Virus record (IMG/VR): IMGVR_UViG_3300042691_042003
Coordinates: 124,001 to 188,000 of that record
Reading direction: 5' to 3' (one strand)
Length of the DNA: 64,000 nt
Below the pieces are notes generated by a model. That model ran no database searches, had not been told where the DNA came from, and saw only the letters and a list, made by a program, of their open reading frames with translations. Made by a program: the position numbers and the translations under genes. This document shows positions 1,605 through 49,556 of this stretch, piece after piece. Every line of letters starts with the position of its first letter. The stretch's first letter is position 1.

Positions 1605-2383
1605 AAACGACAGTTGGAGACCACGGCAAAGGACGTTACTACGTGGTTGATGAAGACAGGAACATTAAGCTCCCTTCCGTAACGACAATACTTACCGAAA
1701 CTTCGGATAAATCAGCATTGGATGCTTGGGTAAAGCGTATAGGACAAGCTGAAGCCGATAAAATATCCACATTTTCTGCAAATCGAGGAACGTTCATGCA
1801 TTCACTTCATGAACATTACCTTTCTGCTAGATTTATTGAAAATCTAGAAAATCCCTTACAAATTTGTTTTAAAAGAGCTATTGAAGAATGCTCTTCTCTT
1901 ACTAAAGAAGAAATGGAAGTAGGGAAAAATCTTTTTCTTAATTTCCATAATAGCTCAGATTTTTATGAAAATGTAAAAGAAATTGCATTTCAAGAAGAAC
2001 CGGTTTGGTCTTTTTTAGGAGGAGGATATGCAGGAAGGTTAGATCTAATGATAAAGAATAAATCAGATGAATTTGTTCTTATAGATTTTAAGACTAGTAG
2101 AAAACCTAAAAAAGAAGATTGGATCGAAGGTTATAAAAAGCAAGTTTCTGCTTATTCTGTAGCTTCTAATGAAGTAAAAGGAATTTTTCCAATAAGATGC
2201 GAAATTTGGATTTCTTGTGAAACTGGAGAAGTACAAAAATTCTCAATAGAACGAGAGGATATAAAAAAATGGTTCTCAAAATTTTATGAAAATGTTCTAA
2301 CATATCATAAAACATTTCCTCAATATAATCATATAATGAATAATGATACCGAAGATAATACATCAAATCTGGGTAGGTCCTAA
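1601..2383 (+). CDS. PD-(D/E)XK exonuclease (Cas4/RecB-like phage nuclease)
   Basis: LPSVTTIL, RGTFMH, YAGRLD, IDFKTS and QVSAY motifs; TTG start. Confidence 0.85.
   Translation: MKTTVGDHGKGRYYVVDEDRNIKLPSVTTILTETSDKSALDAWVKRIGQAEADKISTFSANRGTFMHSLHEHYLSARFIENLENPLQICFKRAIEECSSLTKEEMEVGKNLFLNFHNSSDFYENVKEIAFQEEPVWSFLGGGYAGRLDLMIKNKSDEFVLIDFKTSRKPKKEDWIEGYKKQVSAYSVASNEVKGIFPIRCEIWISCETGEVQKFSIEREDIKKWFSKFYENVLTYHKTFPQYNHIMNNDTEDNTSNLGRS
2309..2337 (+). promoter_or_regulatory. Candidate class II promoter AAAAC-N16-CATATAAT
   Basis: Same bipartite motif and spacing as at 16398, 21176, 29839, 54237 and 56496; ends 5 nt before ATG 2343. Confidence 0.5.
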
Positions 2384-2990
2384 AAAGAAACCTGTAAAAT
2401 ATATGCAAACCTGGAAGGATATGAATCCAGAATGGGAACATATTATTTGGGACGATGAAATGATATCTGAAAAATATCCTAAAGGTTTTCGTAATCAATC
2501 TAAAATTGACGAAATCGAAGAATGGGCAGGAAAAGCAGATATTATGCGTTATGAAATTCTTAATGATTTTGGAGGGATTTATATTGATGCAGATTCAATT
2601 TGTACTAATTCTTTAGACGATCATTTTTTAAAGCATGATTCTTTTGCTTGTTTTGAAAACGAACAATGTCGAGGTAATCTTATAGCTAATGGTTATATAG
2701 GTGCTGTAAAAGGATGTAATTTAATGAAAATACTTATTGAAAAAATAAGTAAAATGAAATCTGTTTCATTTCAAAAAACCGGTAAAATGGCATGGCAATG
2801 TGTAGGACCTCTTCTTTTTACCGAAACTATTTTTGAAAGTAATTATCCTATTTCTGTTTATCCTTCTTTTGTTTTTATTCCTGAACATTATTCTGGTATT
2901 GTTTATCAAGGAAATGGTAAGTCATATTCAAAACAATTCTGGGGATCTACACATGAATTTAAAGATCCTGAATATTATAACAATTTATGA
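2343..2990 (+). CDS. Glycosyltransferase, GT32/Gly_transf_sug DxD family
   Basis: IPKIIHQIW N-terminus, KADIMRYEILNDFGGIYIDAD. Confidence 0.88.
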   Translation: MIPKIIHQIWVGPKKKPVKYMQTWKDMNPEWEHIIWDDEMISEKYPKGFRNQSKIDEIEEWAGKADIMRYEILNDFGGIYIDADSICTNSLDDHFLKHDSFACFENEQCRGNLIANGYIGAVKGCNLMKILIEKISKMKSVSFQKTGKMAWQCVGPLLFTETIFESNYPISVYPSFVFIPEHYSGIVYQGNGKSYSKQFWGSTHEFKDPEYYNNL

Positions 2991-3751
2991 ATAATAAAAT
3001 AACTGTCGTACTTAACGGATTCGGAAGGCCTCAACATTTTGATAGACAGCTAGATGCTGTAATGAATCAAACGGTAAAACCTACTGCGGTTATGTTATGG
3101 CAAAATGGAAATCAACATCAATTTCCCCCTTCTTCTGACAATCTAACTAAAGCCGTTTGTAATGATAATTTAGGTGTTTGGGCTAGATTTGCTTTTGCTC
3201 TTAATGCTAGGACTGAATGGATTTGTGTTTTTGATGATGATACAATTCCGGGTAATAGATGGTTTGAAAATTGCCTAGAAACTATGAAAACTCATGAAGG
3301 ACTTATGGGTACTGTAGGTATTCGACTTCATGGTGATTTAGGTATGTATCCGCTAAGACGTTATGGTTGGGCTGATATCAATAATAATAAACCTATCGAG
3401 GTAGATTATGTAGGGCATTCTTGGTTCTTTCATAGAGATTGGCTTTCTTTCTTTTGGAGAGAAATGCCACCTAAAGAACATAATATGTTAGTAGGTGAAG
3501 ATATTCATTTTTCACTTATGCTTAGAAAATGGGCAAATATAAATACTTTCGTTCCTCCACACCCTTCTAATGATAGATCTTTATGGGGATCTCAACCTGA
3601 AACAGCTCTTTCTATTGGAACCGATCAAGCTGCTCTTTCTATGAATCCTGGAAATCTGCAAAGAATGTCAGGATATGTAGAATTTGCAAAAACTATGGGA
3701 CTTCTTCCTATAAGAAAAAGGCCTGATTTTATTGAAGATGAAAATTTCTAA
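2987..3751 (+). CDS. GT-A fold glycosyltransferase (GT2-like)
   Basis: WICVFDDDTIPG DxD motif and GEDIHFS motif. Confidence 0.75.
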   Translation: MNNKITVVLNGFGRPQHFDRQLDAVMNQTVKPTAVMLWQNGNQHQFPPSSDNLTKAVCNDNLGVWARFAFALNARTEWICVFDDDTIPGNRWFENCLETMKTHEGLMGTVGIRLHGDLGMYPLRRYGWADINNNKPIEVDYVGHSWFFHRDWLSFFWREMPPKEHNMLVGEDIHFSLMLRKWANINTFVPPHPSNDRSLWGSQPETALSIGTDQAALSMNPGNLQRMSGYVEFAKTMGLLPIRKRPDFIEDENF

Positions 3752-3753
3752 AA

Positions 3754-4941
3754 ATGGAAAAAATTAATATAAAATTTTTAAATCATTCTTCTTTCTATCT
3801 TGAAAGTGAAGAATATATTGTATTAGTAGATCCTTGGTATTCAGGGAAAATATTCAATAATAGTTGGTCTTTATTAAAAGATACAGAAGATTCTATTATA
3901 GATTATTCTAAGGTTAAATATATTTCGATTTCACATGAGCATCCAGACCATTTGCATTGGCCTACATTAAAAAAGATAAAAGAAAAAACAAAAGAAGTAA
4001 CAATACTTCTTCCTAAAAGAAATAATCCGAACGTTTTAGAAGAATGTATTAAATTAGGATATAAATTTAAGTATTTAGATTATTTTGTAGAAAATAAAAT
4101 AGAAGAAAATTTATCGATATATCCATATCCTCACGGACATGACAGTGCTCTTATTTATGAAATAGAAGATAAAATTATTCTAAATCAAAACGATGCTTAT
4201 TTAGAAGATAACGTAATTTCTACTATTAATGAAAAATTTAAAAAAATAGATCTGTGGTTATTTCAATTTAGTTTAGCAGGATATTACGGAAATCGTACAG
4301 ATCCTAATACTATAATAGAAAATGGAACTAAATTTCATATAGATAAATTTATAAAATATCAAAATGATTTTAAACCTATAATGAGTGTTCCTTTTGCAAG
4401 CTATGTATATTTTTGCAAAGAATATAATAATTATATTAATGATTATGCAGTTAAATTAGAAGATATTCTAGAAAAAACTAATTACATAACTCAAATTCCA
4501 TTTTATAATGAAAATATAGATTTTCATTCAAATACTATGAATAAAAATAATTTAGAAAAATGGAATGAAATATACGAAAATTGCAAAAAAGAAATTAAAA
4601 AAGCAGAACCTTTCCCTGGAGAAGAAATTATAATAGAAGGATTTAAAAAAATATACGATGAAGGATATAGAATTCTTCAAGTAGGTGGCCTTATTTTAGA
4701 ATTTTTTGATTATGATAAGAATCTAGTTATAGATACTTCTAATAATAAGTATTATTTTATTAAAAAAGAAGAAACTCCTAAAGATTGGATAGCCGGAATA
4801 CTTCCAAGTGAAGAACTTTTAGCTTATATTAAGACTCCATGGGGTGCTGATACCTTAAACATAACTGGTACATTTAATAAAATAAACAATGATCTTTGGT
4901 ATATTTTTATGATGTCCAAAGAATTATTATATCAAAGATAA
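3754..4941 (+). CDS. Metallo-beta-lactamase-fold hydrolase (UlaG/CMP-NeuAc hydroxylase-like)
   Basis: NHSSF, VDPWYSG, SHEHPDHL (HxHxDH), HDSAL. Confidence 0.8.
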   Translation: MEKINIKFLNHSSFYLESEEYIVLVDPWYSGKIFNNSWSLLKDTEDSIIDYSKVKYISISHEHPDHLHWPTLKKIKEKTKEVTILLPKRNNPNVLEECIKLGYKFKYLDYFVENKIEENLSIYPYPHGHDSALIYEIEDKIILNQNDAYLEDNVISTINEKFKKIDLWLFQFSLAGYYGNRTDPNTIIENGTKFHIDKFIKYQNDFKPIMSVPFASYVYFCKEYNNYINDYAVKLEDILEKTNYITQIPFYNENIDFHSNTMNKNNLEKWNEIYENCKKEIKKAEPFPGEEIIIEGFKKIYDEGYRILQVGGLILEFFDYDKNLVIDTSNNKYYFIKKEETPKDWIAGILPSEELLAYIKTPWGADTLNITGTFNKINNDLWYIFMMSKELLYQR

Positions 4942-4952
4942 TATTTATTATA

Positions 4953-5681
4953 ATGAGAGAAAGAGACTTTAAAAAAGAGCTAGATTTCTTTTTAGAAAAA
5001 ATAAAAAGAAAAGAACCTTTTGCTTTTGCAAGGTATTCAGATGGAGAATACATGATTATGAATTCTTTAAACATAGATAAAGGCACTCAAGCTTTAGATG
5101 TTGATAAATGGTCATTTAATCTTCAAAATCAAATATTTTCAAAAGACCTTATTAAAACTTTATTTCATACTGAAATAAATTATTTTTATGCTATAGCTTG
5201 TCCTTGTTGTGGATTAGGTGTAGGACTAGCTGAATTTTATAAAAGAAATTTAAAATGCACAGAAGAAGAAATGACTTGGTCTAATCTTTGGATTAATTCT
5301 AATTACGAATCATTTATAAATTTCATAAAAAAATTAGATAGAAAAGTAAATCTATTGGTTAATTATGAAGGAGAAGATAAGGAATATCCATTTGAAGTCG
5401 ATAAATTTTTCAGCATTCCCGATGATTGTGTTAATTGGTATGAAAAAAATAGAGAATGGATTTTACAAAAAATGAAAGAAATTTCTAAAGAAGATGATCA
5501 GATATTTTTTGTTTCTGCCGGTCCTCTTTCTGAAATTTTAATTCATGAAATGTATTTAAATAATCCTAATAATCAATATATAGATACCGGTTCTTCTTTA
5601 GATATATTTGTTAAAGGACGAATAACAAGACCTTATCAAGGAGAAGGATCTAATTTTAAAAATCAAAAATGTTTATGGTAA
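4953..5681 (+). CDS. GT-D fold (DUF1792-like) glycosyltransferase candidate
   Basis: FARYSDGE resembles the GT-D R(F/Y)GDGE motif; SAGP and IDTGS motifs; ATG 4953 preferred over 4896. Confidence 0.6.
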   Translation: MRERDFKKELDFFLEKIKRKEPFAFARYSDGEYMIMNSLNIDKGTQALDVDKWSFNLQNQIFSKDLIKTLFHTEINYFYAIACPCCGLGVGLAEFYKRNLKCTEEEMTWSNLWINSNYESFINFIKKLDRKVNLLVNYEGEDKEYPFEVDKFFSIPDDCVNWYEKNREWILQKMKEISKEDDQIFFVSAGPLSEILIHEMYLNNPNNQYIDTGSSLDIFVKGRITRPYQGEGSNFKNQKCLW

Positions 5682-6385
5682 AAAATTTATCTCTTCTAGT
5701 ATATACTAATTCAAAATGTAAAGATTTACATGAAGGATATTTTAGTAGAATAAAAAAATTCTTTCCTTCATTAAAAAATATTTTTGCAACATCGGATGAA
5801 CCTATTGAAGGAATTAATTTCATAGAATATAATAACGATTCTTTCCATTATGAACAAATGATTAACGCATTAGATTTAATTCCTACTGATTATGTATTAT
5901 ACAATCAAGAGGATTATATTCTATTTGATTATGTACTCGAAGATAAAATAAAAAAATATTTAGAAATTCTAGAAAACGATAAAAATATTTCTTTTATACG
6001 ATTAATATATTCAGGTGTAAACGATTTTGAAATAAAACCTTATAAAGATGATCTTTTTTATTTAAATCCTAATTCTTTTTATTTCTACTCTACACAAGCA
6101 ACAATATGGAGAAAAGAAGACTTAAAACAAATGTTTTTATATTCGAAAGTAAAACAAATTTTTGACGAACCTGAAAATTCTTTTTACTTAAAATCTTTAA
6201 ATAAAAAAGGATTATGTTCGATTGAAAAAGGAAAAAAAGTAGGAGGGCATTATAATTCCTTAGTTTATCCTTATATTGCTACAGCTTTAGTTAAAGGTGA
6301 ATGGAATTATTCCGAATATCAAGAAGAGCTAGATGATTTTTTTAATGAATTTAAAATAAAAAAAGAATTAAGAGGAGAAAGATAA
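5669..6385 (+). CDS. GT-A-like hypothetical protein
   Basis: DYVLYNQEDY acidic motif, STQATIWRKEDL; lies within the glycan cluster. Confidence 0.55.
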   Translation: MFMVKNLSLLVYTNSKCKDLHEGYFSRIKKFFPSLKNIFATSDEPIEGINFIEYNNDSFHYEQMINALDLIPTDYVLYNQEDYILFDYVLEDKIKKYLEILENDKNISFIRLIYSGVNDFEIKPYKDDLFYLNPNSFYFYSTQATIWRKEDLKQMFLYSKVKQIFDEPENSFYLKSLNKKGLCSIEKGKKVGGHYNSLVYPYIATALVKGEWNYSEYQEELDDFFNEFKIKKELRGER

Positions 6386-6389
6386 AATT

Positions 6390-7154
6390 ATGGAATATAT
6401 ACAAGGTCAAAAATTTAAAGAATTAAACGATAATCATAAAATCTATTATTGCGATACACATAACGTTAATTCCTTTTTTAATAATATTAATTTTTCCCAT
6501 GAATTTATTTTAGTATCACATAATAGTGATGGTAGTATAACCGATAACCCAACTACCGAATATGATGCAGATATTAGGAAAATACCTAAAAATTTAAAAA
6601 AATGGTTCGGACAAAATTTAAAATGTAAATCAGATATTATAGAATCTATACCTATAGGATTAGAAAATTCTATGTGGTTTCCGGAAGAAAGAAAGATAGA
6701 AAAATTATTTAATAAAAAAAGTACAGAAAAAAATCTTAAAAATTTAGTTTATTTAAATCTAAATATAGATAACAATCCTTTAATCCGAGGACCTATTTAT
6801 AATATGTTACAAAATAAAAATTATGTTACAGTTCAATACGGTAGGAATGGATTAAATTATGATAATTATTTAGATAATTTATATAATCATTGCTTTATGA
6901 TTTGTCCTGAAGGTAATGGAATAGATGTTCATCAGCCGTGGGAATCTTTATATATAGGAACAATACCGATACAAAAAAAGAATATAAATAACGAAAATTG
7001 GAGAGAACTCCCTATTTGTTGGCTTGACGAATGGGAACAATTAAATGATGAAAATTTCCTATTATTAGAATATAAAAGAATATCCGAAAAAAAATTCGAT
7101 TTATCTAAATTGGATTTTAATTTTTGGAAGAATAAGATAAAAAATTCTATATGA
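6390..7154 (+). CDS. Exostosin/GT47-like glycosyltransferase
   Basis: ICPEGNGIDVHQPWESLYIGTIPI resembles the exostosin-family C-terminal motif. Confidence 0.65.
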   Translation: MEYIQGQKFKELNDNHKIYYCDTHNVNSFFNNINFSHEFILVSHNSDGSITDNPTTEYDADIRKIPKNLKKWFGQNLKCKSDIIESIPIGLENSMWFPEERKIEKLFNKKSTEKNLKNLVYLNLNIDNNPLIRGPIYNMLQNKNYVTVQYGRNGLNYDNYLDNLYNHCFMICPEGNGIDVHQPWESLYIGTIPIQKKNINNENWRELPICWLDEWEQLNDENFLLLEYKRISEKKFDLSKLDFNFWKNKIKNSI

Positions 7155-8200
7155 AGATAATTGTTATTGGAGCAGGTATTTTTGGAATTACAGTAGCATT
7201 AACATTATCAGAAAATAATTATGATGTTACCTTAGTAGAAAGAGAAGATGATATAATGAATAAAGCCAGTAAATGTAATCATAATAGACTTCATTTCGGA
7301 TTTCATTATCCAAGAAGTGAAAAAACTGCTAAGCAAAGTTTAGAAGGATATGATTTATTTTATAAAAATTTTTCAGATTCGATCGTAAAAAATTTTCCAA
7401 ATTATTATTTAATAGAAAAAAATAGCAAAATTAATAAAGATAATTTTAAAATATTTTGTGATAAATTAAATTTATCTTATCGAGAATTATTTCCTAAAAA
7501 TATTGAAATTAATAAAAATAATATTACATTTTGTGCAATAACAAAAGAGCCAATATTTGATTTTAATTCTATAAAAAATGATCTATATAATAGACTAAAA
7601 AAATCAAAAATCAATTTAATTTTAAATAAAAAAATAGAATCGAAATCAGATTTAAATGATTTCGATGTTGTAATTAATACAACATACAGTAATATTAATT
7701 GTATTAATAATCTTTTTAATATTCCTGAAATAAAATTAAAATTACAAGATGTTATAATTCCTATATTTAGAATGAATTCTGAAAAAATAGGATTAACTAT
7801 TATGGACGGTGATTATTGTTCAATAATGCCAAAAGGTTTTGAAGAAAATACTTTTTTATTATATCATGTAAAATATTCAGTCTTAAAAGAAAGTAAAGGA
7901 TATTTAGAAGACGAAAATTTAATAAATAATAATCCAGATTATATTAAGGATAAAATCGATAAAATTTATAAAAATTCAGAGAAATATTATCCTTTTTTAA
8001 AAAATTGTGAAAAAATTTCTTATTGGAGAACTACAAGAGCTTTACCTATAAATAATGATGATGAAAGATTAAGTACATTAACAATAAATAATATAGAAAA
8101 TAAAAAAATAATATCTCTTTTATCCGGTAAAATAACTACATGTTGGTTAATATCTAAAAAAATACTAAATATATTAAATGAAAACGATATTAATAGGTAA
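7151..8200 (+). CDS. FAD-dependent oxidoreductase
   Basis: IIVIGAGIFG dinucleotide-binding loop, ASKCNHNRLHFGFHYPR, C-terminal SGKITT. Confidence 0.85.
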   Translation: MKIIVIGAGIFGITVALTLSENNYDVTLVEREDDIMNKASKCNHNRLHFGFHYPRSEKTAKQSLEGYDLFYKNFSDSIVKNFPNYYLIEKNSKINKDNFKIFCDKLNLSYRELFPKNIEINKNNITFCAITKEPIFDFNSIKNDLYNRLKKSKINLILNKKIESKSDLNDFDVVINTTYSNINCINNLFNIPEIKLKLQDVIIPIFRMNSEKIGLTIMDGDYCSIMPKGFEENTFLLYHVKYSVLKESKGYLEDENLINNNPDYIKDKIDKIYKNSEKYYPFLKNCEKISYWRTTRALPINNDDERLSTLTINNIENKKIISLLSGKITTCWLISKKILNILNENDINR

Positions 8201-8942
8201 CGGTTATTGGGGATCTATAGTAAAAGAAAAATTAGAAAAACAAACCGATTTAATAGGGGTTTTAAATTCTAAAGATAATATTGATTCTTTTTTAAAAAAA
8301 GAAGTAGATTATATTTTTGTTTGTACTCCTACAAAAACCCATTACGAAATTGTTAAGAAATGTATAGAAAATCATAAAAATGTTTTTTGTGAAAAACCTT
8401 TTACGGGTAATTTCTTTAAAGCTAAAGAATTATATAAAATTTCAGAAAAAAATAATACAAAATTATTCGTCGATAATATTTTTTTATATCGCAATGAGTT
8501 AATTAATATTGAAAGTAATAATTTTAAAAAAATTAAATTTTTATGGAATAAATTTGAAAATCTATATAAAGAAGATCTGTTTACAACATTATTGTATCAT
8601 GATCTCTATTTATTATTAAATATAGCAAAAAATACATGGGACGTAGATTATTTAGAAATATTTGAAGATAAATTAAATTTAAAATTAAAAAATAAAAATT
8701 TAAAAGCAGAATTTATTTATGATAGAAATTATATAGGGAAAAAAGAAAAAAAGATATTTATAGACGATAAATTAATAGATTTTTCTAATCCTTCTAACGA
8801 CCCTTTATCAGAAATAATAGATAATTTAATAAAAAATAATATTAATTTTAATGAAAATAAAAAAATAACTTTGAAAACAATAAAATTATTAAATAAAATA
8901 CAAAATGAATCCATTTTACACACACCAAGAAGTATTAAATAA
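8178..8942 (+). CDS. Gfo/Idh/MocA-family NAD-dependent oxidoreductase
   Basis: LIGNGYWG, TPTKTH, VFCEKP. Confidence 0.85.
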   Translation: MKTILIGNGYWGSIVKEKLEKQTDLIGVLNSKDNIDSFLKKEVDYIFVCTPTKTHYEIVKKCIENHKNVFCEKPFTGNFFKAKELYKISEKNNTKLFVDNIFLYRNELINIESNNFKKIKFLWNKFENLYKEDLFTTLLYHDLYLLLNIAKNTWDVDYLEIFEDKLNLKLKNKNLKAEFIYDRNYIGKKEKKIFIDDKLIDFSNPSNDPLSEIIDNLIKNNINFNENKKITLKTIKLLNKIQNESILHTPRSIK

Positions 8943-9447
8943 AATTTTAGAATCTTTTGATTATTCAAAATCCGTACATTGTCTAGAATTCGGATCAGGA
9001 GAAGGTAGCTCATCAATTTTTTATAAATTTGCAAAATCTTATTCTAATTTATCTGTCGATTGTTTTGAACATGAAGAAGATTGGATGGATAACATGTCAA
9101 AAAAATATAAATTAGAAAATTATAATTTTAATCTTGTTAATTGGTCTAATATTAATTACGATGAATTAAAAATAAAAAAATATGATTTAATTTTTGTAGA
9201 TCAAGGTAATTGGAATGCTAGAATAGAAACAATAGATAAATTAATGAATTATTCTAAATACATTATACTACATGATTACTGTTATTATAATGGTTTTACA
9301 CCTGAAATAGGATATAATCCTGATAGTAATTACAATAATTTTGGAAAAGGGTCCTTTTTCGAAAAATATAATGAAGAATTTAGTATTAGTAGTTTTACCG
9401 ATCTTTATCCCCCTACATTAATTTTTAAATCGAAAAAATTATTTTAA
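8905..9447 (+). CDS. Class I SAM-dependent methyltransferase-like protein
   Basis: CLEFGSGEGS motif I, YDLIFVD, IILHD. Confidence 0.7.
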   Translation: MNPFYTHQEVLNKILESFDYSKSVHCLEFGSGEGSSSIFYKFAKSYSNLSVDCFEHEEDWMDNMSKKYKLENYNFNLVNWSNINYDELKIKKYDLIFVDQGNWNARIETIDKLMNYSKYIILHDYCYYNGFTPEIGYNPDSNYNNFGKGSFFEKYNEEFSISSFTDLYPPTLIFKSKKLF

Positions 9448-9451
9448 AATT

Positions 9452-10141
9452 ATGATTTTAAGTACAAAAGATATTGAAGATATTTATTCTCAATTTATTT
9501 TACCTAAAAAAAATGAGAATTATTTTAAAAAATATTCTTCTCTCCCAATTCATTTAAATAATAAAAAATGGAAATGGGAAGGAAAAGATTTTCCTAGAAT
9601 TATATCCCTCTTAGAATTTAAAGAATTTTTAGATAAAATGGAAAATCCTTTTTTTGAAAATGTGTTATCTTTTAATGGAGATTCTGATCCGGAATATGAA
9701 TTTTTAAAATACAAAAATTTAACAAATTATAATTATACAGATGATACTCTAAAATATGATTTACATAATTTAGAATTAGAAAAAAAAGATTTTGATTTTT
9801 TTATGTCTAATCAAACTTTAGAACATTTATATGACCCTTGTAAAGTTGTTAGAAATATTTACGATCATATGAAACCCGGAGGAATCGTTTATATGAATCT
9901 ACCGACAAATAATATGCCTCATTCTACACCATTTCATTATTATACAGGATTTACTCCTGTAGGTTTAGGTTGTATTTTTAAACAAGCAGGATTCAAAATA
10001 TTGGATATAGGTTTTTGGGGGAATCGGGAATATTTAGATTTTTCACTTTTTAAAAATATTTGGGCAGATTATACTCAAATGAATAATTTTTCTTCTGAAA
10101 TGGATAAAGAAGTAATTTCTTGGATTTTTGCTATAAAATAA
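9452..10141 (+). CDS. Methyltransferase type 11-like protein
   Basis: FDFFMSNQTLEHLYDP...MKPGG. Confidence 0.7.
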   Translation: MILSTKDIEDIYSQFILPKKNENYFKKYSSLPIHLNNKKWKWEGKDFPRIISLLEFKEFLDKMENPFFENVLSFNGDSDPEYEFLKYKNLTNYNYTDDTLKYDLHNLELEKKDFDFFMSNQTLEHLYDPCKVVRNIYDHMKPGGIVYMNLPTNNMPHSTPFHYYTGFTPVGLGCIFKQAGFKILDIGFWGNREYLDFSLFKNIWADYTQMNNFSSEMDKEVISWIFAIK

Positions 10142-10155
10142 AATTTAAATAAATT

Positions 10156-10872
10156 ATGAATTATGACGCGGTAATTTTATCATCAGAGAAGGATTATATT
10201 AAATTAGATTTTTTATTGGATTCTTTAATAAATTTAGACCCAAAACCTGAAAATATCTTTGTTATAAGTCCTACTGAAATCAAAGAAAAAAGAAAAGAGG
10301 TTAATTATTTTTTAGATGATGAAGTCCTTAAATTTAAAAAAGAAAATCTAAAATTTAGACCTAATTGGATTAAACAACAATTCTTAAAGCTATTTCAAGA
10401 TATTACAAAAAACGACTATTACCTAATTTTAGATTCAGATATTTTTTTAAATAAAAAAATAGAAATCTTTAAGAATAATAAACCTAATTTTCTTCTTTCG
10501 GTAGATCAAAACCATAAACCCTATTTTGATTTTTTAGAAAATTTTGGAATAAAGAAAATTTATGAAAGATCTTTTATATCTGAAATAATGTTATTTAATA
10601 AAAAAATCATAAGAAGGTTTTTAGAGGATTCTAATTTAACAGTCGATTCTTTTATTAATAAATCTATAGAAATAATTAACGATAATTGTTATATTTCGGA
10701 ATTTGAATTTTATGGAAATATGGTTCTTAAGTATTATCCTGATTTATATGATTTCACTATTTTAAATACAAGAGTTATAGGAAAACATGAAGATTGGAAT
10801 AAAAATGAAATATTGCAAACAATAAATAATAATCAAGATTTAGATATCATATCATATCACACATGGAAATAA
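10156..10872 (+). CDS. DUF6492-like GT-A protein
   Basis: WIKQQFLKL, YLILDSD, SEFEFYGN. Confidence 0.6.
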   Translation: MNYDAVILSSEKDYIKLDFLLDSLINLDPKPENIFVISPTEIKEKRKEVNYFLDDEVLKFKKENLKFRPNWIKQQFLKLFQDITKNDYYLILDSDIFLNKKIEIFKNNKPNFLLSVDQNHKPYFDFLENFGIKKIYERSFISEIMLFNKKIIRRFLEDSNLTVDSFINKSIEIINDNCYISEFEFYGNMVLKYYPDLYDFTILNTRVIGKHEDWNKNEILQTINNNQDLDIISYHTWK

Positions 10873-11759
10873 ATATCGTATTAATTCATATCGGTACAAT
10901 TTATCCGGATCACATGGATGATTGTATAGATCAATTATTAAAATTTAATCTTAAAGTTCATTTAGTAATAAGCTCTTCTTTAGTAGAGAAAATTAAAAGT
11001 AAAAAAATAATTTTATCTAAGGTAGAAGATTATACAGACGAAAAATATAATTCTTTTTTTATAGAAAAGTATGATAAAAATTTCACAGAAAATTTTAGAG
11101 ATGGATTTTGGAATTCTACTTCTTCAAGATTTTTTATTCTAGAAAATTATACAAGAAAAAATAATTTACAAAATTTTTATCATTTAGAACATGATAATCT
11201 TATTTTTAATAATTTAGAGAATGTAACGAATATTTTAAAAAATAAAAATGAAGAAATGTTTATAGTTATTGATTCGGAATCCAGATGTATTCCTTCAATA
11301 ATATTTATAAAAAATTATAAAATTTTAGAAATCTTAACTAATTTTATTTTTAATAATCGTTATAATAATGATATGGAAAACTTATTTTTATTTTTTCAAA
11401 TGAATAGAAATATAGTAGGTAATTTACCTATACTTCCTGACGATCATAATTTAAATTTGATTAGTAAAACTGGAATTATTGCTAGTAATAATATAAATTA
11501 TAGTAATCTTTACAAGGAATTAAAAATTGTTTTTGATGGTGCAGCTTTAGGTCAATATATAGGTGGCATAGATCCTAGAAATGATAGTGGTAACACTATA
11601 GGTTTTGTAAATGAAACTACAATTTTTAATGTTTCTGAAGTAGGATTTTCTTGGGTTAATTATAAACCAACCTTAAATATTAATAATCGTATTATTGATG
11701 TTTGTAATTTACATATACATTCTAAAAATTTAAACTTAAAAAATCTTTTAAAATTATAA
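10863..11759 (+). CDS. Glycosyltransferase-like hypothetical protein
   Basis: TSSRFFIL, HLEHDN, FDGAALGQYIGGIDPRN, NLHIHSK; motif set typical of phage glyco-island proteins. Confidence 0.55.
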   Translation: MEINIVLIHIGTIYPDHMDDCIDQLLKFNLKVHLVISSSLVEKIKSKKIILSKVEDYTDEKYNSFFIEKYDKNFTENFRDGFWNSTSSRFFILENYTRKNNLQNFYHLEHDNLIFNNLENVTNILKNKNEEMFIVIDSESRCIPSIIFIKNYKILEILTNFIFNNRYNNDMENLFLFFQMNRNIVGNLPILPDDHNLNLISKTGIIASNNINYSNLYKELKIVFDGAALGQYIGGIDPRNDSGNTIGFVNETTIFNVSEVGFSWVNYKPTLNINNRIIDVCNLHIHSKNLNLKNLLKL

Positions 11760-11790
11760 AACATATAAAATTATAAAGTAAAATAATAGG

Positions 11791-12462
11791 ATGATGGATA
11801 ATATAAACATTGATAAAGAAAAAATATGTATACTTTACACAGGGAAAAGCGAATTTATAAACGAAATAAAAAAAATTAAGAATTATAATAATTATAATTT
11901 TATTTTTTCTACATGGAAAGGTAATGAAAGTAAATACGAAAAGAATGATGTAGTCGTTTTTAATGATACTTCTAATTTAGCGATAAAAACAAGTTTAGAA
12001 TTACAAAGAATAACTATTTTAGAAGGATTAAAAAAATCAAAAGAATTAGGTTTTAGAAGAACTTTAAAATTAAGAGATGACTTAATTCCTACTAATTTAG
12101 ATAAATTTTTAGAATTAATAAACAATGAAAATATTAATATATTATGCTGGCATGAACATAATATAGGGTTACCTGGTTATTTTGTAGATTATCTAATTTC
12201 AGGAGAAACTGATTTATTAATAGACGTATATTCTAATATAGATATAAATTTTCATCAAGTATCAGAAGCCCCTTATACTAAATCATTATTAAGATATTCA
12301 GATAAAATAAAATTTTTCCTTTATGATTTAAATCAAAATAATAATGATTTATTTTGGTTTAGGATAGGTGATTTTTTAAGTAGCTACAATCCTAATTTAA
12401 TTCATACCAGTAAGTATATGCATTTAGAAAATTACGAAAATATTAAAAAAGAATATTTATGA
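11791..12462 (+). CDS. WavE-like polysaccharide synthesis protein
   Basis: FSTW and LKLRDD resemble the WavE STW and KxRSD motifs; VDYLISG. Confidence 0.5.
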   Translation: MMDNINIDKEKICILYTGKSEFINEIKKIKNYNNYNFIFSTWKGNESKYEKNDVVVFNDTSNLAIKTSLELQRITILEGLKKSKELGFRRTLKLRDDLIPTNLDKFLELINNENINILCWHEHNIGLPGYFVDYLISGETDLLIDVYSNIDINFHQVSEAPYTKSLLRYSDKIKFFLYDLNQNNNDLFWFRIGDFLSSYNPNLIHTSKYMHLENYENIKKEYL

Positions 12463-13184
12463 ATATATTAATACCTATGGCTGGAAGAGGAGAACGATTT
12501 AGTAATAATGGTTTTGACATTCCTAAACCTCTAATAGAATTAGAGGGTAAAACTATGATAGAATTAGCAATAAAATCTCTAAATATAGAAGGTAATTATA
12601 TATACGTAACATATAGATACACTAATAAAGAATTTAATCAAAAATTAGAAGAAATTCTTAATAGGATAACTCCTAATTGCACCATTATAAAAATAGATTA
12701 TATTACAGAAGGTCCTGCTTCCAGTGCATTATTAGCAAAAAAATACATAGATAATGAAGAAGAATTAATCATAACTAATTGTGACCAAATAATGTCATGG
12801 GATTCCAAAAATTTTTTAGAATTTATCAAAAAAACTGACAAAGAAGGTATAGTTGTTACGTATAATTCTTCTACCGAAAAGAATTCATATGTTAAATTAA
12901 ACGAAATAGGAGATGCAATAGAGTTAGCCGAAAAAAAGGTTATAAGCGAATTTTCCTTAAATGGTATACATTATTGGAAAAAAGGAAAATACTTTGTAGA
13001 ATCGGCAGAAGATATGATATCAAAAAATATAAGAGTAAATAATGAATTTTATATTTCTATGACATATAATGAAATGATTGAAAAAAAACTTAAAGTATCT
13101 AATTATCATATAATAAATAATCATCATCACGCAGTAGGTACTCCAGAAGATCTAAAAGAATATTTAAAAAATGGAAGTAAGTAG
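12459..13184 (+). CDS. Sugar-phosphate nucleotidyltransferase (NTP_transferase)
   Basis: ILIPMAGRGERF..PKPLI, TEGPAS, ITNCDQ, AEKKVIS, EFYIS, GTPEDL. Confidence 0.88.
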   Translation: MNILIPMAGRGERFSNNGFDIPKPLIELEGKTMIELAIKSLNIEGNYIYVTYRYTNKEFNQKLEEILNRITPNCTIIKIDYITEGPASSALLAKKYIDNEEELIITNCDQIMSWDSKNFLEFIKKTDKEGIVVTYNSSTEKNSYVKLNEIGDAIELAEKKVISEFSLNGIHYWKKGKYFVESAEDMISKNIRVNNEFYISMTYNEMIEKKLKVSNYHIINNHHHAVGTPEDLKEYLKNGSK

Positions 13185-13491
13185 ATTCGAAAATTATAAA
13201 GACGGCTGGTTTGTTGGTGATTTTTTTCCTTCTGCATATAAAACCAATCTATTCGAGGTATGTTACAAATTTCATAAAAAAGGTGAAGTTTGGGATAAAC
13301 ATTATCATAAGGTTTCAACCGAAATAAATTATTTAATTGAAGGAGAGATGATTATTCAAGAAAAGAAATTAAAAAGTGGAGATGTATTTGTCATACATCC
13401 TTATGAAATTGCAGATCCGGAATTTATTTCTGATTGTAAATTAATTATTATAAAAACCCCTTCTAGCACAAAAGATAAATACACAATTTAA
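13171..13491 (+). CDS. Cupin-fold protein
   Basis: GWFVGDF, HYHKVSTEINYLIEG (HxH..E), GDVFVIHP. Confidence 0.8.
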   Translation: MEVSRFENYKDGWFVGDFFPSAYKTNLFEVCYKFHKKGEVWDKHYHKVSTEINYLIEGEMIIQEKKLKSGDVFVIHPYEIADPEFISDCKLIIIKTPSSTKDKYTI

Positions 13492-13498
13492 AAAAGAT

Positions 13499-14731
13499 AT
13501 GGCAATAAATATTTTCACAAAAGATATTAATTACGAAAATTATTTTATCGTAAAATATTATTTAAAAGGAAGAACTTCCTTAAAAACAGCAGCTTGGAAT
13601 TTGGCTATAGGACAAAGTATAGGAAATCCTAATAATCGAAGCGTTTGGGAAACCGACCAAATGTTTCTAGATCATAGTTGTTTTATTTTAGAAGATGAGA
13701 AATATCTAGAATCGGTAAAAGAAGGAGAAATAGAAATTGCTTTTCCTTTAGCAAATTTAAATCTAGAAGAAGATGGAATATCTCAAATTCTTTGTCATAT
13801 TGCAGGTGGACAAGTAGATATCTTAGAATTAGAAATGTGTCATGTTTTAGATATTAATTTACCGAAAAAAATAGAAGATAAATTTAGATTAAAACCTGCA
13901 TTTGGTATTGATGGTTTTAGGAAATTTAATGGAGTTAAAGAAAAACCATTTTTTGGAGGAATTATTAAACCTAAGGTAGGAATGAGTCCTAAAATTCTTT
14001 TAGAAGCAGTGAAAGAGATGGTAGATGGAGGAGTTAATTTTATTAAAGAAGATGAATTATTAGGAAATCCTGATCATTGTAAATTATCAGAAAGGGTTCC
14101 TCTAATCACTAATTGGTTAACAAAAAATGCACCAAATGTTATATACACTTTTTGTATTAATGGAGATTCTCCTTATGCATTAGAAAGAGCTAATTTCGTA
14201 GAGAAGGAAGGAGGAAATGGAATTCATATTAATGTTTGGAGTGGATTAGGGATTTATAGAGCGATTAGAAAACAAAATCCTAACTTATGGATTCATTTTC
14301 AAAAAAGTGGAGATAAATTCTTTACTGATCGTAGATCTCCTTTTCATATATATTGGCCGGTTATTTGTAAAATTGCTGGATGGTCCGGTGCTGATTCGAT
14401 ACATGCTGGAATGATTGGAGGATATATGAATCAAGACGATCAAGAATTATCAGATTCTTTAAAAGTTTTATGGAAGTATAATATTGTTCCTGCTCTAAGT
14501 TGTGGAATGCATCCAGGTTTAGTTCAATACATAAATCAATTATTAAATAGTTATGATTGGATGGCTAATGTAGGAGGTGCAATGCACGGTCATCCTATGG
14601 GAACATTATCTGGAGGCCTTGCAATGAGACAAGCAATTGACGGAAATATTGACAAACCTGAATATAAGGCTGCTATAGAAAAATGGGGTACAAAAGAATT
14701 TTCTTCGGATTTAGCTTATAGAATATTTTAA
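13499..14731 (+). CDS. RuBisCO-like protein (form IV, non-carboxylating)
   Basis: GGIIKPKVGMS, GGVNFIKEDE, DSIHAG, PALSCG and VGGAMHGHP motifs; K334 equivalent is Tyr and H294 equivalent is Gln. Confidence 0.92.
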   Translation: MAINIFTKDINYENYFIVKYYLKGRTSLKTAAWNLAIGQSIGNPNNRSVWETDQMFLDHSCFILEDEKYLESVKEGEIEIAFPLANLNLEEDGISQILCHIAGGQVDILELEMCHVLDINLPKKIEDKFRLKPAFGIDGFRKFNGVKEKPFFGGIIKPKVGMSPKILLEAVKEMVDGGVNFIKEDELLGNPDHCKLSERVPLITNWLTKNAPNVIYTFCINGDSPYALERANFVEKEGGNGIHINVWSGLGIYRAIRKQNPNLWIHFQKSGDKFFTDRRSPFHIYWPVICKIAGWSGADSIHAGMIGGYMNQDDQELSDSLKVLWKYNIVPALSCGMHPGLVQYINQLLNSYDWMANVGGAMHGHPMGTLSGGLAMRQAIDGNIDKPEYKAAIEKWGTKEFSSDLAYRIF

Positions 14732-14744
14732 AAATAAAATAAAA

Positions 14745-15314
14745 ATGGAAACTTTGTTAGATGTAATAAAAAAATTTAATTTATATAAAAATTCTCATTT
14801 AGACGGAACTGATAAAGCTTATATTCATGATTTTATATCAGTTTTTTATCAAAAAGAATTTGAAAAAATTAAAAACAAAGAAATAAAAATCTTAGAAATA
14901 GGAACTTGCACGGGAGCATCTTTAAAATTATGGAAAGAATATTTTAAAAATTCTAAAGTAGAAGGAGTAGATATTCAAGATAGAGTAATGCCGGAATATA
15001 GAGATTCTAATATTAAGTATCATATAGGAGATGCATATAATTATGATTTTATTAATAAAATATCTAAAGAAAAATACGATATTATTATAGATGATGGACC
15101 TCACACAATAGAAACTCAATTATTTTTCGTTAATAATTATCATAAAATGTTAAATAATAAAGGATATTTAATAATTGAAGATGTAGATTCCGATGATAAT
15201 ATTAAAGCATTAAAAGAAAAAATACAAGAAATTTTTAAATCTGAACCTTTTGTATATGATAAAAGGAAAGAAATGAATATGAATAATGAAGTACTAATTT
15301 CAATAAAAAAATAA
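14745..15314 (+). CDS. Class I SAM-dependent methyltransferase
   Basis: GTDK..H, ILEIG...G.SL..W, YDIIIDDGPH, LIIED. Confidence 0.85.
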   Translation: METLLDVIKKFNLYKNSHLDGTDKAYIHDFISVFYQKEFEKIKNKEIKILEIGTCTGASLKLWKEYFKNSKVEGVDIQDRVMPEYRDSNIKYHIGDAYNYDFINKISKEKYDIIIDDGPHTIETQLFFVNNYHKMLNNKGYLIIEDVDSDDNIKALKEKIQEIFKSEPFVYDKRKEMNMNNEVLISIKK

Positions 15315-15318
15315 AATT

Positions 15319-15954
15319 ATGTTAATACAAAACTTTATAGATTTTATCAATACAAAACAAAAAATAGATCCTAAAATTATATTAGATATAGGTTCTAGAG
15401 ATTTAGATCAAAGTATTGAATTTAATTCGATATTTCCTAATTCTGTAATACATGCTTTTGAGCCAAATCCTGATCAATTTGCAATATGTGAAGAAGCTTC
15501 AAAAAATTATCCTAATATTCATGTTCATCAATTAGCAATTAGTAATAAAAAAGAAACTTTAAAATTCTATAGAACTATAGGAAATATAGGAGCCTCTTCT
15601 CTATTAGAACCAATTGATGTACCTTTTGGATGGACTAAAGAATATAATATTATTGATGTAGAATCCGAAAGGTTAGATTCTTGGTTAAAAAATAATAATA
15701 TAAAAGAAGCAGATATACTTTGGATGGACGCTCAAGGCGTAGAATTATTAGCTCTAGAAGGAATGGGAGAATTCTTAAAAGATGTAAAATTTATTCATTG
15801 TGAAGCTTCCGAAAAACCTTATTATAAAGGACATATCTTAAAAGAAGAATTAGAAAAATTTTTAGTAGATTCCGGTTTCGAAATAGAATTCCATCCAGTT
15901 TTTCATCCTTACGGAGAAGGTGATATATTCGCAGTTAATAAAAGATTTAACTAA
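15319..15954 (+). CDS. FkbM-family methyltransferase
   Basis: ILDIGSRD, HAFEPNP, SSLLEP, RLDSW, DILWMDAQGVEL. Confidence 0.88.
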   Translation: MLIQNFIDFINTKQKIDPKIILDIGSRDLDQSIEFNSIFPNSVIHAFEPNPDQFAICEEASKNYPNIHVHQLAISNKKETLKFYRTIGNIGASSLLEPIDVPFGWTKEYNIIDVESERLDSWLKNNNIKEADILWMDAQGVELLALEGMGEFLKDVKFIHCEASEKPYYKGHILKEELEKFLVDSGFEIEFHPVFHPYGEGDIFAVNKRFN

Positions 15955-15979
15955 TATAATAGATCTATTTATATATTAA

Positions 15980-16417
15980 ATGATTCTAATTTCACATAGA
16001 GGCAATATTTCAGGAAGAATAGAAGGTTTTGAAAATAAACCCGAGTATGTAGAAGACACGATAAGACTTGGATTTGATGTTGAAGTAGATCTAAGAATTC
16101 ATAATCAAAAGCTATATCTAGGACATGATGAACCTCAATACGAAATTTCTCTAGATTGGTTATATGAAAGAAATTCTAAACTTTGGATTCATTGTAAAGA
16201 TATTCAATCTCTACTTAAAGTAAGAGATAAACCACTTCATTTCTTTTGGCATGAAGAAGATACAATTACTCTAACTTCAAAAAATTATATTTGGGCATAT
16301 CCAGGAAAACAACCGATAAAGGGATCTATAGCAGTTATGCCAGAAATATATAATGATAATTTAGATCATTGTATTGGTATCTGTTCTGATTTTATAGGAA
16401 ACTATAAACAAAAATAG
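15980..16417 (+). CDS. GDPD/PLC-like phosphodiesterase-fold small protein
   Basis: ISHRGN, EN, GFDVEVD, LGHD, WIHCKD, GICSD. Confidence 0.7.
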   Translation: MILISHRGNISGRIEGFENKPEYVEDTIRLGFDVEVDLRIHNQKLYLGHDEPQYEISLDWLYERNSKLWIHCKDIQSLLKVRDKPLHFFWHEEDTITLTSKNYIWAYPGKQPIKGSIAVMPEIYNDNLDHCIGICSDFIGNYKQK

Positions 16418-45763: not shown

Positions 45764-45767
45764 TTGT

Positions 45768-45793
45768 AAGTCTCGATTCGTCGAGACTTTTTT
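45768..45793 (+). terminator. Intrinsic terminator
   Basis: AAGTCTCGA-TTCG-TCGAGACTT followed by a T run. Confidence 0.85.
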
Positions 45794-45846
45794 AGTCGGT
45801 AATTTTTTCGAATATATAATAAAAGGATTTATTTGAAGAAATACTT

Positions 45847-49550: not shown

Positions 49551-49556
49551 TTTAGA

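What the first reader, a model, noticed from the sequence alone, without database searches (positions are those of the whole stretch)
11791..16417. Phage-borne RuBisCO-like protein in an apparent biosynthetic sugar-activation module
Seen: a coupled run of WavE-like protein, sugar-phosphate nucleotidyltransferase, cupin and a 410-aa RuBisCO-fold protein, then two methyltransferases and a GDPD-like protein. By hand alignment the RLP keeps K157/K159 (K175/K177 equivalents), the carbamylation motif K183-E-D-E (KDDE), H302 (H327), S334 and GG359-360. It has Q39 for E60, Q268-K269 for H294-R295 and Y309 for K334. Known: loss of K334 marks non-carboxylating form IV RLPs; characterised RLPs are enolases, isomerases or (trans/de)carboxylases in methionine salvage and branched-sugar (apiose, hamamelose) catabolism. 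Inference: this RLP acts anabolically, rearranging a ketose phosphate into an unusual, possibly branched, sugar that is then NDP-activated, transferred and methylated. I do not recall such a role being characterised.
Basis: partly seen in the sequence, partly recalled or inferred. Interest (0 to 1): 0.85.

Follow-up and report, generated by a model that had tools for sequence, protein, structure and literature searches.

The report
Phage RuBisCO-like sugar-activation gene module
A large phage carries a non-carboxylating relative of RuBisCO inside a tightly conserved gene set (nucleotidyltransferase, cupin, mini-phosphodiesterase, WavE-like transferase) that also sits in bacterial capsule and LPS loci, so this RuBisCO relative most likely helps build a nucleotide-activated sugar for surface glycans, a role not yet described for the RuBisCO family.

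Summary
That pattern is invariant in 129 relatives. The protein belongs to a separate, strongly supported clade outside the form III-like, MtnW-like and OiaX-like groups. This is the 'form IV-like' phage/Beckwithbacteria clade that Jaffe et al. reported with function unknown, so 'phage-borne RLP' is not new.

What appears new is the context. In 99 loci with full flanks, a nucleotidyltransferase lies within 7 kb of the RLP in 96, the cupin in 75 and the 145-aa mini-GDPD in 74. A WavE/DUF7796-like transferase is present in 60. Natural fusions tie the parts together: RLP-NTase (128-member cluster), NTase-cupin, HAD-NTase and NTase-GDPD-like.

The module also occurs in cells: a Pelagibacter LPS-core locus, a Kps-type capsule locus, Legionella next to LicD, and contigs assigned to CPR and DPANN MAGs. 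The best reading is an anabolic pathway in which the RLP enolises and isomerises a ketose phosphate that is then nucleotide-activated, transferred and, in this phage, methylated. The substrate, the product and the role of the mini-GDPD remain unknown. I found no paper on this function.

The parts
11791..12462 (+). 223-aa putative GT-A-type transferase, distantly WavE/DUF7796-like
   Evidence: No Pfam hit itself. Homologues sit directly upstream of the NTase in 9 other loci. The family profile matches the DUF7796 family (hhalign 89%, E=2e-6). Two of 7 members hit PF07507 WavE at 1.8e-4. It also matches a PF07507-annotated neighbour of an RLP-NTase fusion (93.6%). The Atlas links it to viral WavE, DUF7796 and GNT-I clusters.
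12459..13184 (+). 241-aa nucleotidyltransferase (NDP-sugar pyrophosphorylase type)
   Evidence: PF00483, 39.4 bits against cut-off 21.2. Best solved relative is 4evw, an uncharacterised NDP-sugar pyrophosphorylase (6e-13), followed by heptose/mannose-1-P guanylyltransferases. Found within 7 kb of the RLP in 96 of 99 full loci and in all 23 RLP groups. It is fused in other genomes to the RLP, cupin, HAD and a GDPD-like domain.
13171..13491 (+). 106-aa single-domain cupin; HxH(x4)E motif with H44 and E51 invariant and H46 in >=90% of sequences
   Evidence: Weak Cupin_2 hit. AF2 pLDDT 96.1. Best sequence-profile and fold matches among small cupins are the Thermococcus mini phosphomannose isomerases 7zvm/7zvy (5e-5; Foldseek 1.9e-5, TM 0.66). 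Present in 75 of 99 loci. Fused to the C-terminus of the NTase in 6 loci.
13499..14731 (+). 410-aa RuBisCO-like protein of the 'form IV-like' clade
   Evidence: PF00016 1.2e-32. Far below every NCBIfam cut-off for forms I-III, MtnW and OiaX. Falls in a separate clade with 100% SH-aLRT support. Active-site signature is invariant in 129 sequences.
14745..15314 (+). 189-aa class-I SAM methyltransferase (variable accessory)
   Evidence: Methyltransf_31/24 hits. Homologues in only 13 of 132 loci.
15319..15954 (+). 211-aa FkbM-family methyltransferase (accessory of one module variant)
   Evidence: PF05050 3.8e-18 and TIGR01444. Lies directly downstream of the RLP in L043, L044, L045, L046, L073, L074 and L081, where the RLP is only 53-57% identical.
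15980..16417 (+). 145-aa minimal GDPD/PLC-like phosphodiesterase-fold protein ('P145')
   Evidence: Invariant H6-R7, N19, E35-x-D37, H49. Profile hit to GDPD 7e0v at 1.6e-4. AF2 pLDDT 97.5. GDPD is the top fold match. Present in 74 of 99 loci. It stays next to the RLP even where the NTase and cupin are absent (L138).
2343..11759 (+). variable low-GC (about 21-24%) glycan-gene island upstream of the module (context, not conserved with it)
   Evidence: Contains DXD sugar-binding glycosyltransferase, GT2, MBL-fold, FAD and GFO/IDH/MocA oxidoreductases and methyltransferases. GC profile. Most of these ORFs have homologues in fewer than 10 of 132 RLP loci.

Best explanation
The region is a conserved biosynthetic module that makes and uses a nucleotide-activated unusual sugar (or sugar phosphate) for glycan decoration.

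Shown:
- The RLP, an NDP-sugar-pyrophosphorylase-type nucleotidyltransferase, a small metal-type cupin, a minimal GDPD-fold protein and a WavE/DUF7796-like transferase travel together in phages, bacteria and archaea.
- They are repeatedly fused to one another.
- In cells they lie in LPS-core or capsule loci.

Inferred mechanism:
1. The RLP keeps the enolisation machinery of RuBisCO: the carbamylatable K183, the Mg ligands D185 and E186, K157 and K159, and the P1 phosphate loop G336/G359-G360.
2. It has lost the carboxylation residues (E60>Q39, N123>G104, H294>Q268, K334>Y309).
3. It therefore acts as a Mg-dependent enolising isomerase or epimerase that turns a common ketose phosphate into a rare keto-sugar phosphate.
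4. The cupin, like the cupin of bifunctional PMI/GDP-mannose pyrophosphorylases, then interconverts keto and aldo forms.
5. Where an HAD domain is present, it removes or moves a phosphate.
6. The nucleotidyltransferase makes the NDP derivative.
7. The WavE-like protein transfers it, and in this phage the FkbM and class-I methyltransferases O-methylate it.

The mini-GDPD handles a phosphodiester step that I cannot place. In the phage the acceptor is probably a host envelope glycan or a virion glycan.
For: Synteny:
- NTase near the RLP in 125 of 132 loci, and in 96 of 99 loci with full flanks. Cupin in 75, P145 in 74, all three in 63.
- The same set is kept at 30% RLP identity (L133).

Fusions:
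- RLP-NTase: 128-member cluster of mostly 667-671 aa proteins from independent data sets.
- NTase-cupin in 6 loci, HAD-NTase including a complete Pelagibacter chromosome, and NTase-GDPD-like in a Micrarchaeota MAG contig.

Cellular context:
- Pelagibacter locus among GmhA/HldE/GT9/KdsB genes.
- Kps-type capsule locus with RLP-NTase, cupin, GDPD-like, a second NTase and WavE.
- Legionella RLP-NTase next to LicD.
- Common neighbours are SDR epimerases, GT2 and DegT aminotransferases.

Enzyme features:
- The active-site signature is invariant in 129 sequences.
- The cupin is closest to the mini phosphomannose isomerases.
- The NTase is nearest to mannose/heptose-1-P guanylyltransferases.
- The HAD domain resembles beta-phosphoglucomutase, sugar-phosphate phosphatases and CbbY.
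Against: - No substrate, product or activity was tested, so the order of steps is unknown.
- No kinase or classical mutase is conserved in the module. How a glycosyl-1-phosphate would arise is therefore unexplained.
- The distal (P2) site is remodelled (R295>K269, H298>D272, H327 kept), so I cannot claim a bisphosphate substrate.
- The mini-GDPD has no assigned step.
- DPANN and Legionella loci keep only RLP+NTase, and Legionella pairs them with LicD. That points to a phospho-alcohol donor rather than a glycosyl donor.
- The cupin and GDPD assignments rest on weak scores (E about 1e-4 to 1e-5).
- The acceptor in the phage is unknown.
Confidence: 0.55

Rival explanations
1. Phospho-sugar or phospho-alcohol donor variant. 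The NTase activates a non-anomeric phosphate ester made by the RLP, as in CDP-ribitol, CDP-glycerol or CDP-6-fructose. A LicD-type, or here GDPD-fold/WavE-like, enzyme then transfers the X-phosphate and creates a phosphodiester-linked decoration.
For: - Legionella and Tatlockia loci place a LicD family gene (7e-43) divergently next to RLP-NTase.
- Minimal loci have only RLP+NTase, with no mutase or kinase.
- RLP substrates known from the literature are ketose 1-phosphates (PMC6302742).
- A GDPD-fold protein handles phosphodiesters.
Against: - LicD occurs only in the 4 Legionellaceae loci.
- The recurrent transferase elsewhere is GT-A-like (WavE, DUF7796, GNT-I-like), which suggests glycosyl transfer.
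- The NTase's nearest solved relatives act on glycosyl-1-phosphates.
Confidence: 0.2
2. Small-molecule or DNA-modification pathway. The nucleotide-activated intermediate is either cyclised by the mini-GDPD to a cyclic phosphate (IspD/IspF-like logic) or attached to phage DNA bases. It does not end up on a surface glycan.
For: - An NTase-GDPD-like fusion exists.
- The RLP-P145 pair persists without NTase or cupin in L138.
- In the window a thymidylate-synthase homologue with an insertion lies 1.1 kb downstream.
Against: Cellular homologues lie in LPS-core and capsule loci with glycosyltransferases. The thymidylate-synthase neighbour is shared by only 2 of 132 loci.
Confidence: 0.1
3. Salvage enzyme for methylthioadenosine or 5-deoxyribose, like MtnW or the Rhodospirillum rubrum RLP. 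The cupin would play the role of acireductone dioxygenase or of the 1-methylthio-xylulose-5-P methylsulfurylase.
For: RLP+cupin pairs are known in the methionine salvage and MTA-isoprenoid shunt pathways (PMC6302742 and PMC5893883).
Against: - The RLP lies outside the MtnW-like cluster in the tree.
- MtnW models score 76-102 bits against cut-offs of 409-514.
- No MtnA/B/K/X genes were seen in the surveyed neighbourhoods.
- No acireductone dioxygenase appears among the cupin's listed matches.
- The fusion to an NTase is unexplained by salvage.
Confidence: 0.05
4. Catabolic RLP acting on an acid-sugar phosphate, like the apiose-pathway decarboxylase/transcarboxylase (OiaX type), or a true carboxylase that boosts host carbon metabolism.
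For: The second-best solved hit is the Burkholderia RLP 3nwr (9e-33), and the OiaX model gives 1e-33. Phage auxiliary metabolic genes are common (PMC6389311).
Against: - OiaX scores 117 bits against a cut-off of 700, and the protein is outside that cluster.
- K334, H294, E60 and N123 are all replaced, invariantly.
- No PRK, R15P isomerase, sugar kinase, dehydrogenase or transporter is conserved in the neighbourhood.
Confidence: 0.04

Closest known systems
'Form IV-like' RuBisCO-like proteins of phages and Beckwithbacteria (Jaffe et al. 2019, Mol Biol Evol, PMC6389311)
   Same: It is the same clade. It is divergent from other RLPs, sits on roughly 200-kb myovirus-type contigs, groups with Beckwithbacteria, and lacks key catalytic residues.
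   Different: That paper left the function open, and its main text contains none of the words nucleotidyl, cupin or glycosyl. Here the clade is shown to be tied to an NTase/cupin/mini-GDPD/WavE-like module. It is also found in Pelagibacter, Legionella, Azospirillum and Turneriella genomes and in Verrucomicrobiae and DPANN MAGs.
Characterised form IV RLPs: MtnW (DK-MTP-1-P enolase), R. rubrum RLP (5-methylthioribulose-1-P isomerase), apiose-pathway RLPs (OiaX type)
   Same: Same fold. It retains the K175, K177, KCX201, D203 and E204 equivalents, and, as in RLPs generally, the K334 equivalent is lost. Enolisation chemistry on a keto-sugar phosphate is expected (PMC6302742).
   Different: It forms a separate clade with its own invariant signature (Q39, N43-P44, Q268-K-S-G, Y309, C335). 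The known enzymes act in salvage or catabolism, whereas this one sits in biosynthetic glycan loci and is fused to an NTase.
GDP-mannose pathway with bifunctional type II phosphomannose isomerase / GDP-mannose pyrophosphorylase (NTase-cupin)
   Same: The NTase-cupin domain order of the fusions, the cupin's closeness to mini phosphomannose isomerases, and the NTase's relatedness to mannose-1-P guanylyltransferases and to the H. pylori PMI/GMP entry 2qh5.
   Different: The similarities are weak. No phosphomannomutase is conserved. An RLP and a GDPD-fold protein are added.
CDP-ribitol / LicD (TarI-TarJ, ISPD-FKTN) type phospho-alcohol decoration
   Same: A pentulose-phosphate-derived unit is activated by an NTase and transferred by LicD. 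Legionella loci pair RLP-NTase with LicD.
   Different: No reductase is present, LicD is absent from phage and SAR11 loci, and the RLP takes the place of the reductase step.
GDP-heptose pathway (GmhA, HddA, GmhB HAD phosphatase, HddC NTase)
   Same: The HAD plus NTase logic, and the NTase's similarity to the chain 6jq8, deposited as a putative 6-deoxy-D-mannoheptose pathway protein. The Pelagibacter module sits beside heptose genes.
   Different: There is no kinase and no SIS isomerase inside the module. The HAD domain is present only in a minority of loci.

Membership tests
RuBisCO large-subunit superfamily | Significant match to the catalytic TIM-barrel domain (PF00016) and the N-terminal domain | tested here: met
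   PF00016 1.2e-32 (113.8 bits, cut-off 30.1). The N-domain scores 20.0 bits, just under the cut-off of 20.7. There are 98 PDB RuBisCO/RLP hits.
Bona fide RuBisCO (forms I-III) | Full catalytic set including E60, N123, H294 and K334 (spinach numbering) | tested here: not met
   Q39, G104, Q268 and Y309 occupy these positions in the alignment to 2cwx, and they are invariant in 129 relatives. The rubisco_III model scores 149.7 bits against a cut-off of 497.
Bona fide RuBisCO (forms I-III) | Carbamylatable lysine and Mg ligands (K201, D203, E204), K175 and K177 | tested here: met
   K183, D185, E186, K157 and K159 are invariant. Carbamylation itself is not testable here.
MtnW (2,3-diketo-5-methylthiopentyl-1-P enolase) | Score above the equivalog cut-off and placement in the YkrW clade | tested here: not met
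   TIGR03332 scores 75.9 against 513.6, and NF007095 scores 101.9 against 409. The protein lies outside the MtnW-like cluster in the tree.
OiaX (3-oxo-isoapionate-4-P decarboxylase) type RLPs | Score above the equivalog cut-off and placement in that clade | tested here: not met
   NF042437 scores 116.8 against 700. It falls in a separate clade.
'Form IV-like' phage/Beckwithbacteria RLP clade (Jaffe et al.) | Groups with Beckwithbacteria and large-phage sequences, apart from other RLPs | tested here: met
   A 39-row clade with 100% SH-aLRT support holds the window, phage loci and the Beckwithbacteria locus L097. A relative's contig carries a Gp23 capsid gene.
Sugar-phosphate nucleotidyltransferase (PF00483), for ORF 12459-13184 | Pfam score above the gathering cut-off and an N-terminal G-x-G-x-R motif | tested here: met
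   39.4 bits against 21.2. The N-terminal PMAGRGERF...PKPLI segment aligns with 4evw. Substrate and NTP specificity were not tested.
Glycerophosphodiester phosphodiesterase (GDPD) superfamily, for ORF 15980-16417 | HR...E-x-D...HD catalytic/metal motif on a TIM-barrel | tested here: inconclusive
   The motif is present and invariant. The profile hit to 7e0v covers only the first 52 residues at E=1.6e-4. Foldseek's top hit is GDPD 1o1z, but at E=5e-3 and TM 0.53, and the Atlas gives TM 0.75-0.77 to GDPD clusters. There is no PF03009 hit, and 145 aa is too short for a full barrel.
Cupin superfamily / small phosphomannose isomerases, for ORF 13171-13491 | Double-stranded beta-helix with an HxH...E metal motif; isomerase activity | tested here: inconclusive
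   The fold and motif are met. The nearest matches among small cupins are the mini-PMIs 7zvm/7zvy, but at TM 0.66 and 23% identity. Activity was not tested.
WavE (PF07507), for ORF 11791-12462 | Match to the WavE model | tested here: inconclusive
   The window protein has no hit. Two of 7 family members reach 1.8e-4. The family profile matches a PF07507-annotated protein at 93.6% and DUF7796 at 89%.

The most novel reading that the evidence does not exclude
The module is a previously unrecognised, kinase- and mutase-independent route to a nucleotide-activated ketose or otherwise rare sugar.

1. The RLP reshapes a ketose 1-phosphate.
2. A first nucleotidyl transfer activates that phosphate.
3. 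The mini-GDPD moves the phosphate onto the anomeric oxygen through a cyclic phosphodiester.
4. A second nucleotidyl transfer makes the true glycosyl donor.

This would be the first anabolic job for the RuBisCO superfamily. Large aquatic phages would use it to rewrite envelope or virion glycans.
Probability: 0.12. Interest if true: 0.85.

Novelty: new variant of a known kind. Interest (0 to 1): 0.7.

Why it matters
All RLP functions I could find described (and my own knowledge) are in sulfur salvage or sugar catabolism. A clade that works in nucleotide-sugar or glycan biosynthesis would add an anabolic role to the RuBisCO superfamily. It would also give a function to a very abundant 'unknown' clade: 401 IMG/VR contigs, more than 2600 homologues, and carriers that include SAR11, and contigs in CPR and DPANN MAGs. 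It would point to an undescribed glycan constituent in some of the most abundant marine bacteria and in their large phages, which bears on phage-host recognition. The conserved five-part module and the cultured carriers make the question directly testable.

Tried and rejected
- tblastn of the RLP against 50,697 GenBank phage records found nothing, so no isolate phage is available.
- Five literature searches for RLP plus nucleotidyltransferase, LicD, cupin, Pelagibacter or capsule found no functional study. The Tabita 2007 review is not held.
- An apparent link between P145 and a roughly 260-aa family in my clustering came from one ORF spanning two adjacent genes. The two families are unrelated. 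The 260-aa family is DUF7796 and has no PDB relative.
- A Legionella 148-aa neighbour is not a P145 homologue.
- The 106-aa gene called upstream in the Pelagibacter locus does not match the cupin profile, and it carries the LGHDEP motif typical of P145.
- Window ORFs 4896-5681, 5669-6385, 6390-7154, 10156-10872 and 10863-11759 show no relation to DUF7796 and remain unknown.
- The 434-aa gene that replaces NTase/cupin in L005 has no informative PDB match.
- The P145 alignment was too diverse for a locus scan.
- Promoter and terminator scans gave nothing above chance.
- I considered that the adenylosuccinate-synthetase homologue is PurZ and judged it unlikely.

Full report
**Observation.** Seven + strand ORFs lie between 11791 and 16417. 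They overlap or are separated by at most 25 bp.
- Pfam confirms a sugar-phosphate nucleotidyltransferase at 12459-13184 (39.4 bits) and a weak Cupin_2 match at 13171-13491.
- It also confirms a RuBisCO large-chain catalytic domain at 13499-14731 (1.2e-32), a class-I methyltransferase and an FkbM methyltransferase.
- It gives nothing for the first ORF (223 aa) or the last (145 aa).
Retained: K157/K159, K183-E-D-E, H302, S334, G359-G360. Changed: Q39, Q268-K269, Y309.
- The same alignment to 2cwx puts G104 at the N123 position.

**The window is phage-like.**
- It matches an IMG/VR contig of 246,081 bp.
- It carries PHROG matches to a sigma factor, a nuclease, a virion structural protein, a thymidylate synthase and a TROVE-like RNA-binding protein.
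- A relative with an 88%-identical RLP carries a Gp23 capsid gene.

**Where the RLP belongs.**
- It scores far below the curated cut-offs of every NCBIfam model: form III 150 against 497, OiaX 117 against 700, MtnW 76-102 against 409-514.
- I built a tree of 122 superfamily members. The window groups with phage loci and loci from SAR11, Legionella, Azospirillum, Turneriella, Verrucomicrobiae, Beckwithbacteria and DPANN in a 39-row clade with 100% SH-aLRT support. That clade is separate from the clusters I labelled form III-like, MtnW-like and OiaX-like.
- This matches the 'form IV-like' clade that Jaffe et al. found on about 80 phage fragments and in Beckwithbacteria, with function unknown (PMC6389311).
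- So a phage-borne RLP is not new. No isolate phage in GenBank has it.
- Across 129 sequences down to about 32% identity, the following are invariant: Y20, G38-Q39, N43-P44, K157, K159, K183-E-D-E, R199, H243, N245, Q268, S270-G271, Y309, S334-C335-G336 and G359.
- This argues for one conserved chemistry and one kind of substrate.

**Context is the main result.**
- I fetched 132 loci that encode clade members, from viral contigs, genomes and assemblies.
- tblastn with every window ORF showed that only four are widely shared: the NTase (125 loci), the cupin (92), the RLP itself and the 145-aa ORF (91). All other ORFs were shared by 13 loci or fewer.
- In the 99 loci with at least 5 kb on both sides, the NTase is within 7 kb in 96, and in all 23 RLP sequence groups. 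The cupin is there in 75 (16 groups), P145 in 74 (14 groups) and all three in 63.
- The set persists at 30% RLP identity.
- A fifth recurrent partner is a GT-A-like family. It appears as DUF7796 in 61 loci or as the window's 223-aa type in 10 loci.
- The 223-aa type is linked to DUF7796 and WavE by profile comparison and by the Atlas.
- The FkbM methyltransferase follows the RLP in a sub-variant shared with loci whose RLP is only 53-57% identical.

**Fusions.**
- The RLP-NTase fusion is a 128-member cluster of mostly 667-671 aa proteins from Tara, JGI, MGnify and ENA data.
- NTase-cupin fusions occur in six loci of several groups.
- HAD-NTase fusions occur in many phages and in a complete Pelagibacter chromosome.
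- One Micrarchaeota MAG protein joins an NTase to a P145-like domain.
- The NTase is therefore the hub of a single pathway.
- A tree of the NTase domains separates a cupin-adjacent type, which includes the window's, from an HAD-fused or cupin-less type.

**Cellular settings.**
- In Pelagibacter sp. Uisw_094 the module lies among GmhA, HldE-like, GT9 and KdsB genes, which is the LPS inner-core region.
- On a marine contig it lies in a Kps-type capsule locus. The order there is RLP-NTase, cupin, a 207-aa GDPD-like protein, a second NTase and a true WavE, next to phosphonate genes.
- In Legionella species RLP-NTase sits beside a divergent LicD.
- Frequent neighbours elsewhere are SDR epimerases/dehydratases, GT2 and DegT aminotransferases.

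**The partners.**
- P145 has an invariant HRG..EN..ExD..GHD pattern. Its profile hits GDPD 7e0v at 1.6e-4. Its model has pLDDT 97.5 and its best fold matches are GDPDs.
- The cupin (pLDDT 96) has an HxH(x4)E motif with H44 and E51 invariant and H46 in at least 90% of sequences. Among small cupins it is closest to the Thermococcus mini phosphomannose isomerases.
- The NTase is closest to the uncharacterised 4evw, and then to heptose/mannose-1-P guanylyltransferases.
- The HAD domain resembles beta-phosphoglucomutase, sugar-phosphate phosphatases and CbbY.

**Mechanism (inference).**
- The RLP retains the carbamate/Mg site, K175/K177 and the P1 glycine loops. It has lost E60, N123, H294 and K334. 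From established RuBisCO and RLP enzymology, this predicts enolisation followed by reprotonation (isomerase or epimerase), not carboxylation.
- The NTase-cupin and HAD-NTase architectures echo the GDP-mannose and GDP-heptose logic.
- I therefore propose this order: ketose phosphate, RLP, rare keto-sugar phosphate, (cupin, HAD), NTase, NDP derivative, WavE-like transfer, methylation.
- Several points stay open. No kinase or mutase is conserved. The distal site is remodelled (K269, D272, H302). P145 has no assigned step.
- The Legionella LicD context favours a phospho-sugar donor instead. I rank that as the main rival.

**Other rivals.** Salvage, catabolic and carboxylase readings are disfavoured by phylogeny, residues and context.

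**Literature and verdict.** I found no paper on the function.

Noticed in passing
window 17510-18694: Thymidylate-synthase homologue of 394 aa. It matches in three stretches and carries a large insertion relative to the 266-position Pfam model.
   Followed up: no
window 34980-35996: Short (338 aa) adenylosuccinate-synthetase homologue. PHROGs labels its family as PurZ-like, but it is much closer to PurA structures (8e-49) than to PurZ (2e-13), so a 2-aminoadenine genome is not indicated.
   Followed up: partly
window 57959-59554; L085: A 531-aa protein has a weak F5/8 type C match and a weak type IX secretion C-terminal sorting-domain match (both below Pfam cut-offs). A 74%-identical RLP lies on a contig binned with a Saprospirales MAG. 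Together these hint at a Bacteroidota host.
   Followed up: no
window 4001-12000: GC drops to about 21-24%, against 30-40% in the rest of the window. The stretch holds glycosyltransferases, oxidoreductases, an MBL-fold protein, methyltransferases and five ORFs with no detectable family, which looks like a variable glycan island.
   Followed up: partly
window 43296-51431: Four consecutive large ORFs (594-778 aa) have no PHROG hit. Only one has a Pfam hit, a YDG domain. They may be novel structural or adhesin-like proteins.
   Followed up: no
window 30190-31629: TROVE/Ro-like RNA-binding protein (DUF2828, DUF7788, VWA), 45-47% identical to proteins of Cronobacter S13-like and Vibrio jumbo phages.
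   Followed up: no
proteins P0249, P0266, P0160, P0161 (superfamily search): Other RuBisCO-superfamily fusions turned up: TIR-RLP (583 aa), RLP-APH kinase (1265 aa) and IF-2B-family isomerase-RuBisCO (726-742 aa). The TIR fusion could be defence-related.
   Followed up: no
L139:1-9900: The Kps-type capsule locus with the RLP-NTase fusion also encodes PEP mutase, a split TPP decarboxylase, Fe-ADH, an NTP_transf_3 enzyme and sulfatase-family proteins. This suggests a phosphonate-decorated capsule.
   Followed up: no
L138:2528-2959: The 174-kb phage that keeps only RLP+P145 encodes an RpiB-type sugar-phosphate isomerase 7 kb upstream. This may be a hint at pentose phosphate substrates.
   Followed up: no
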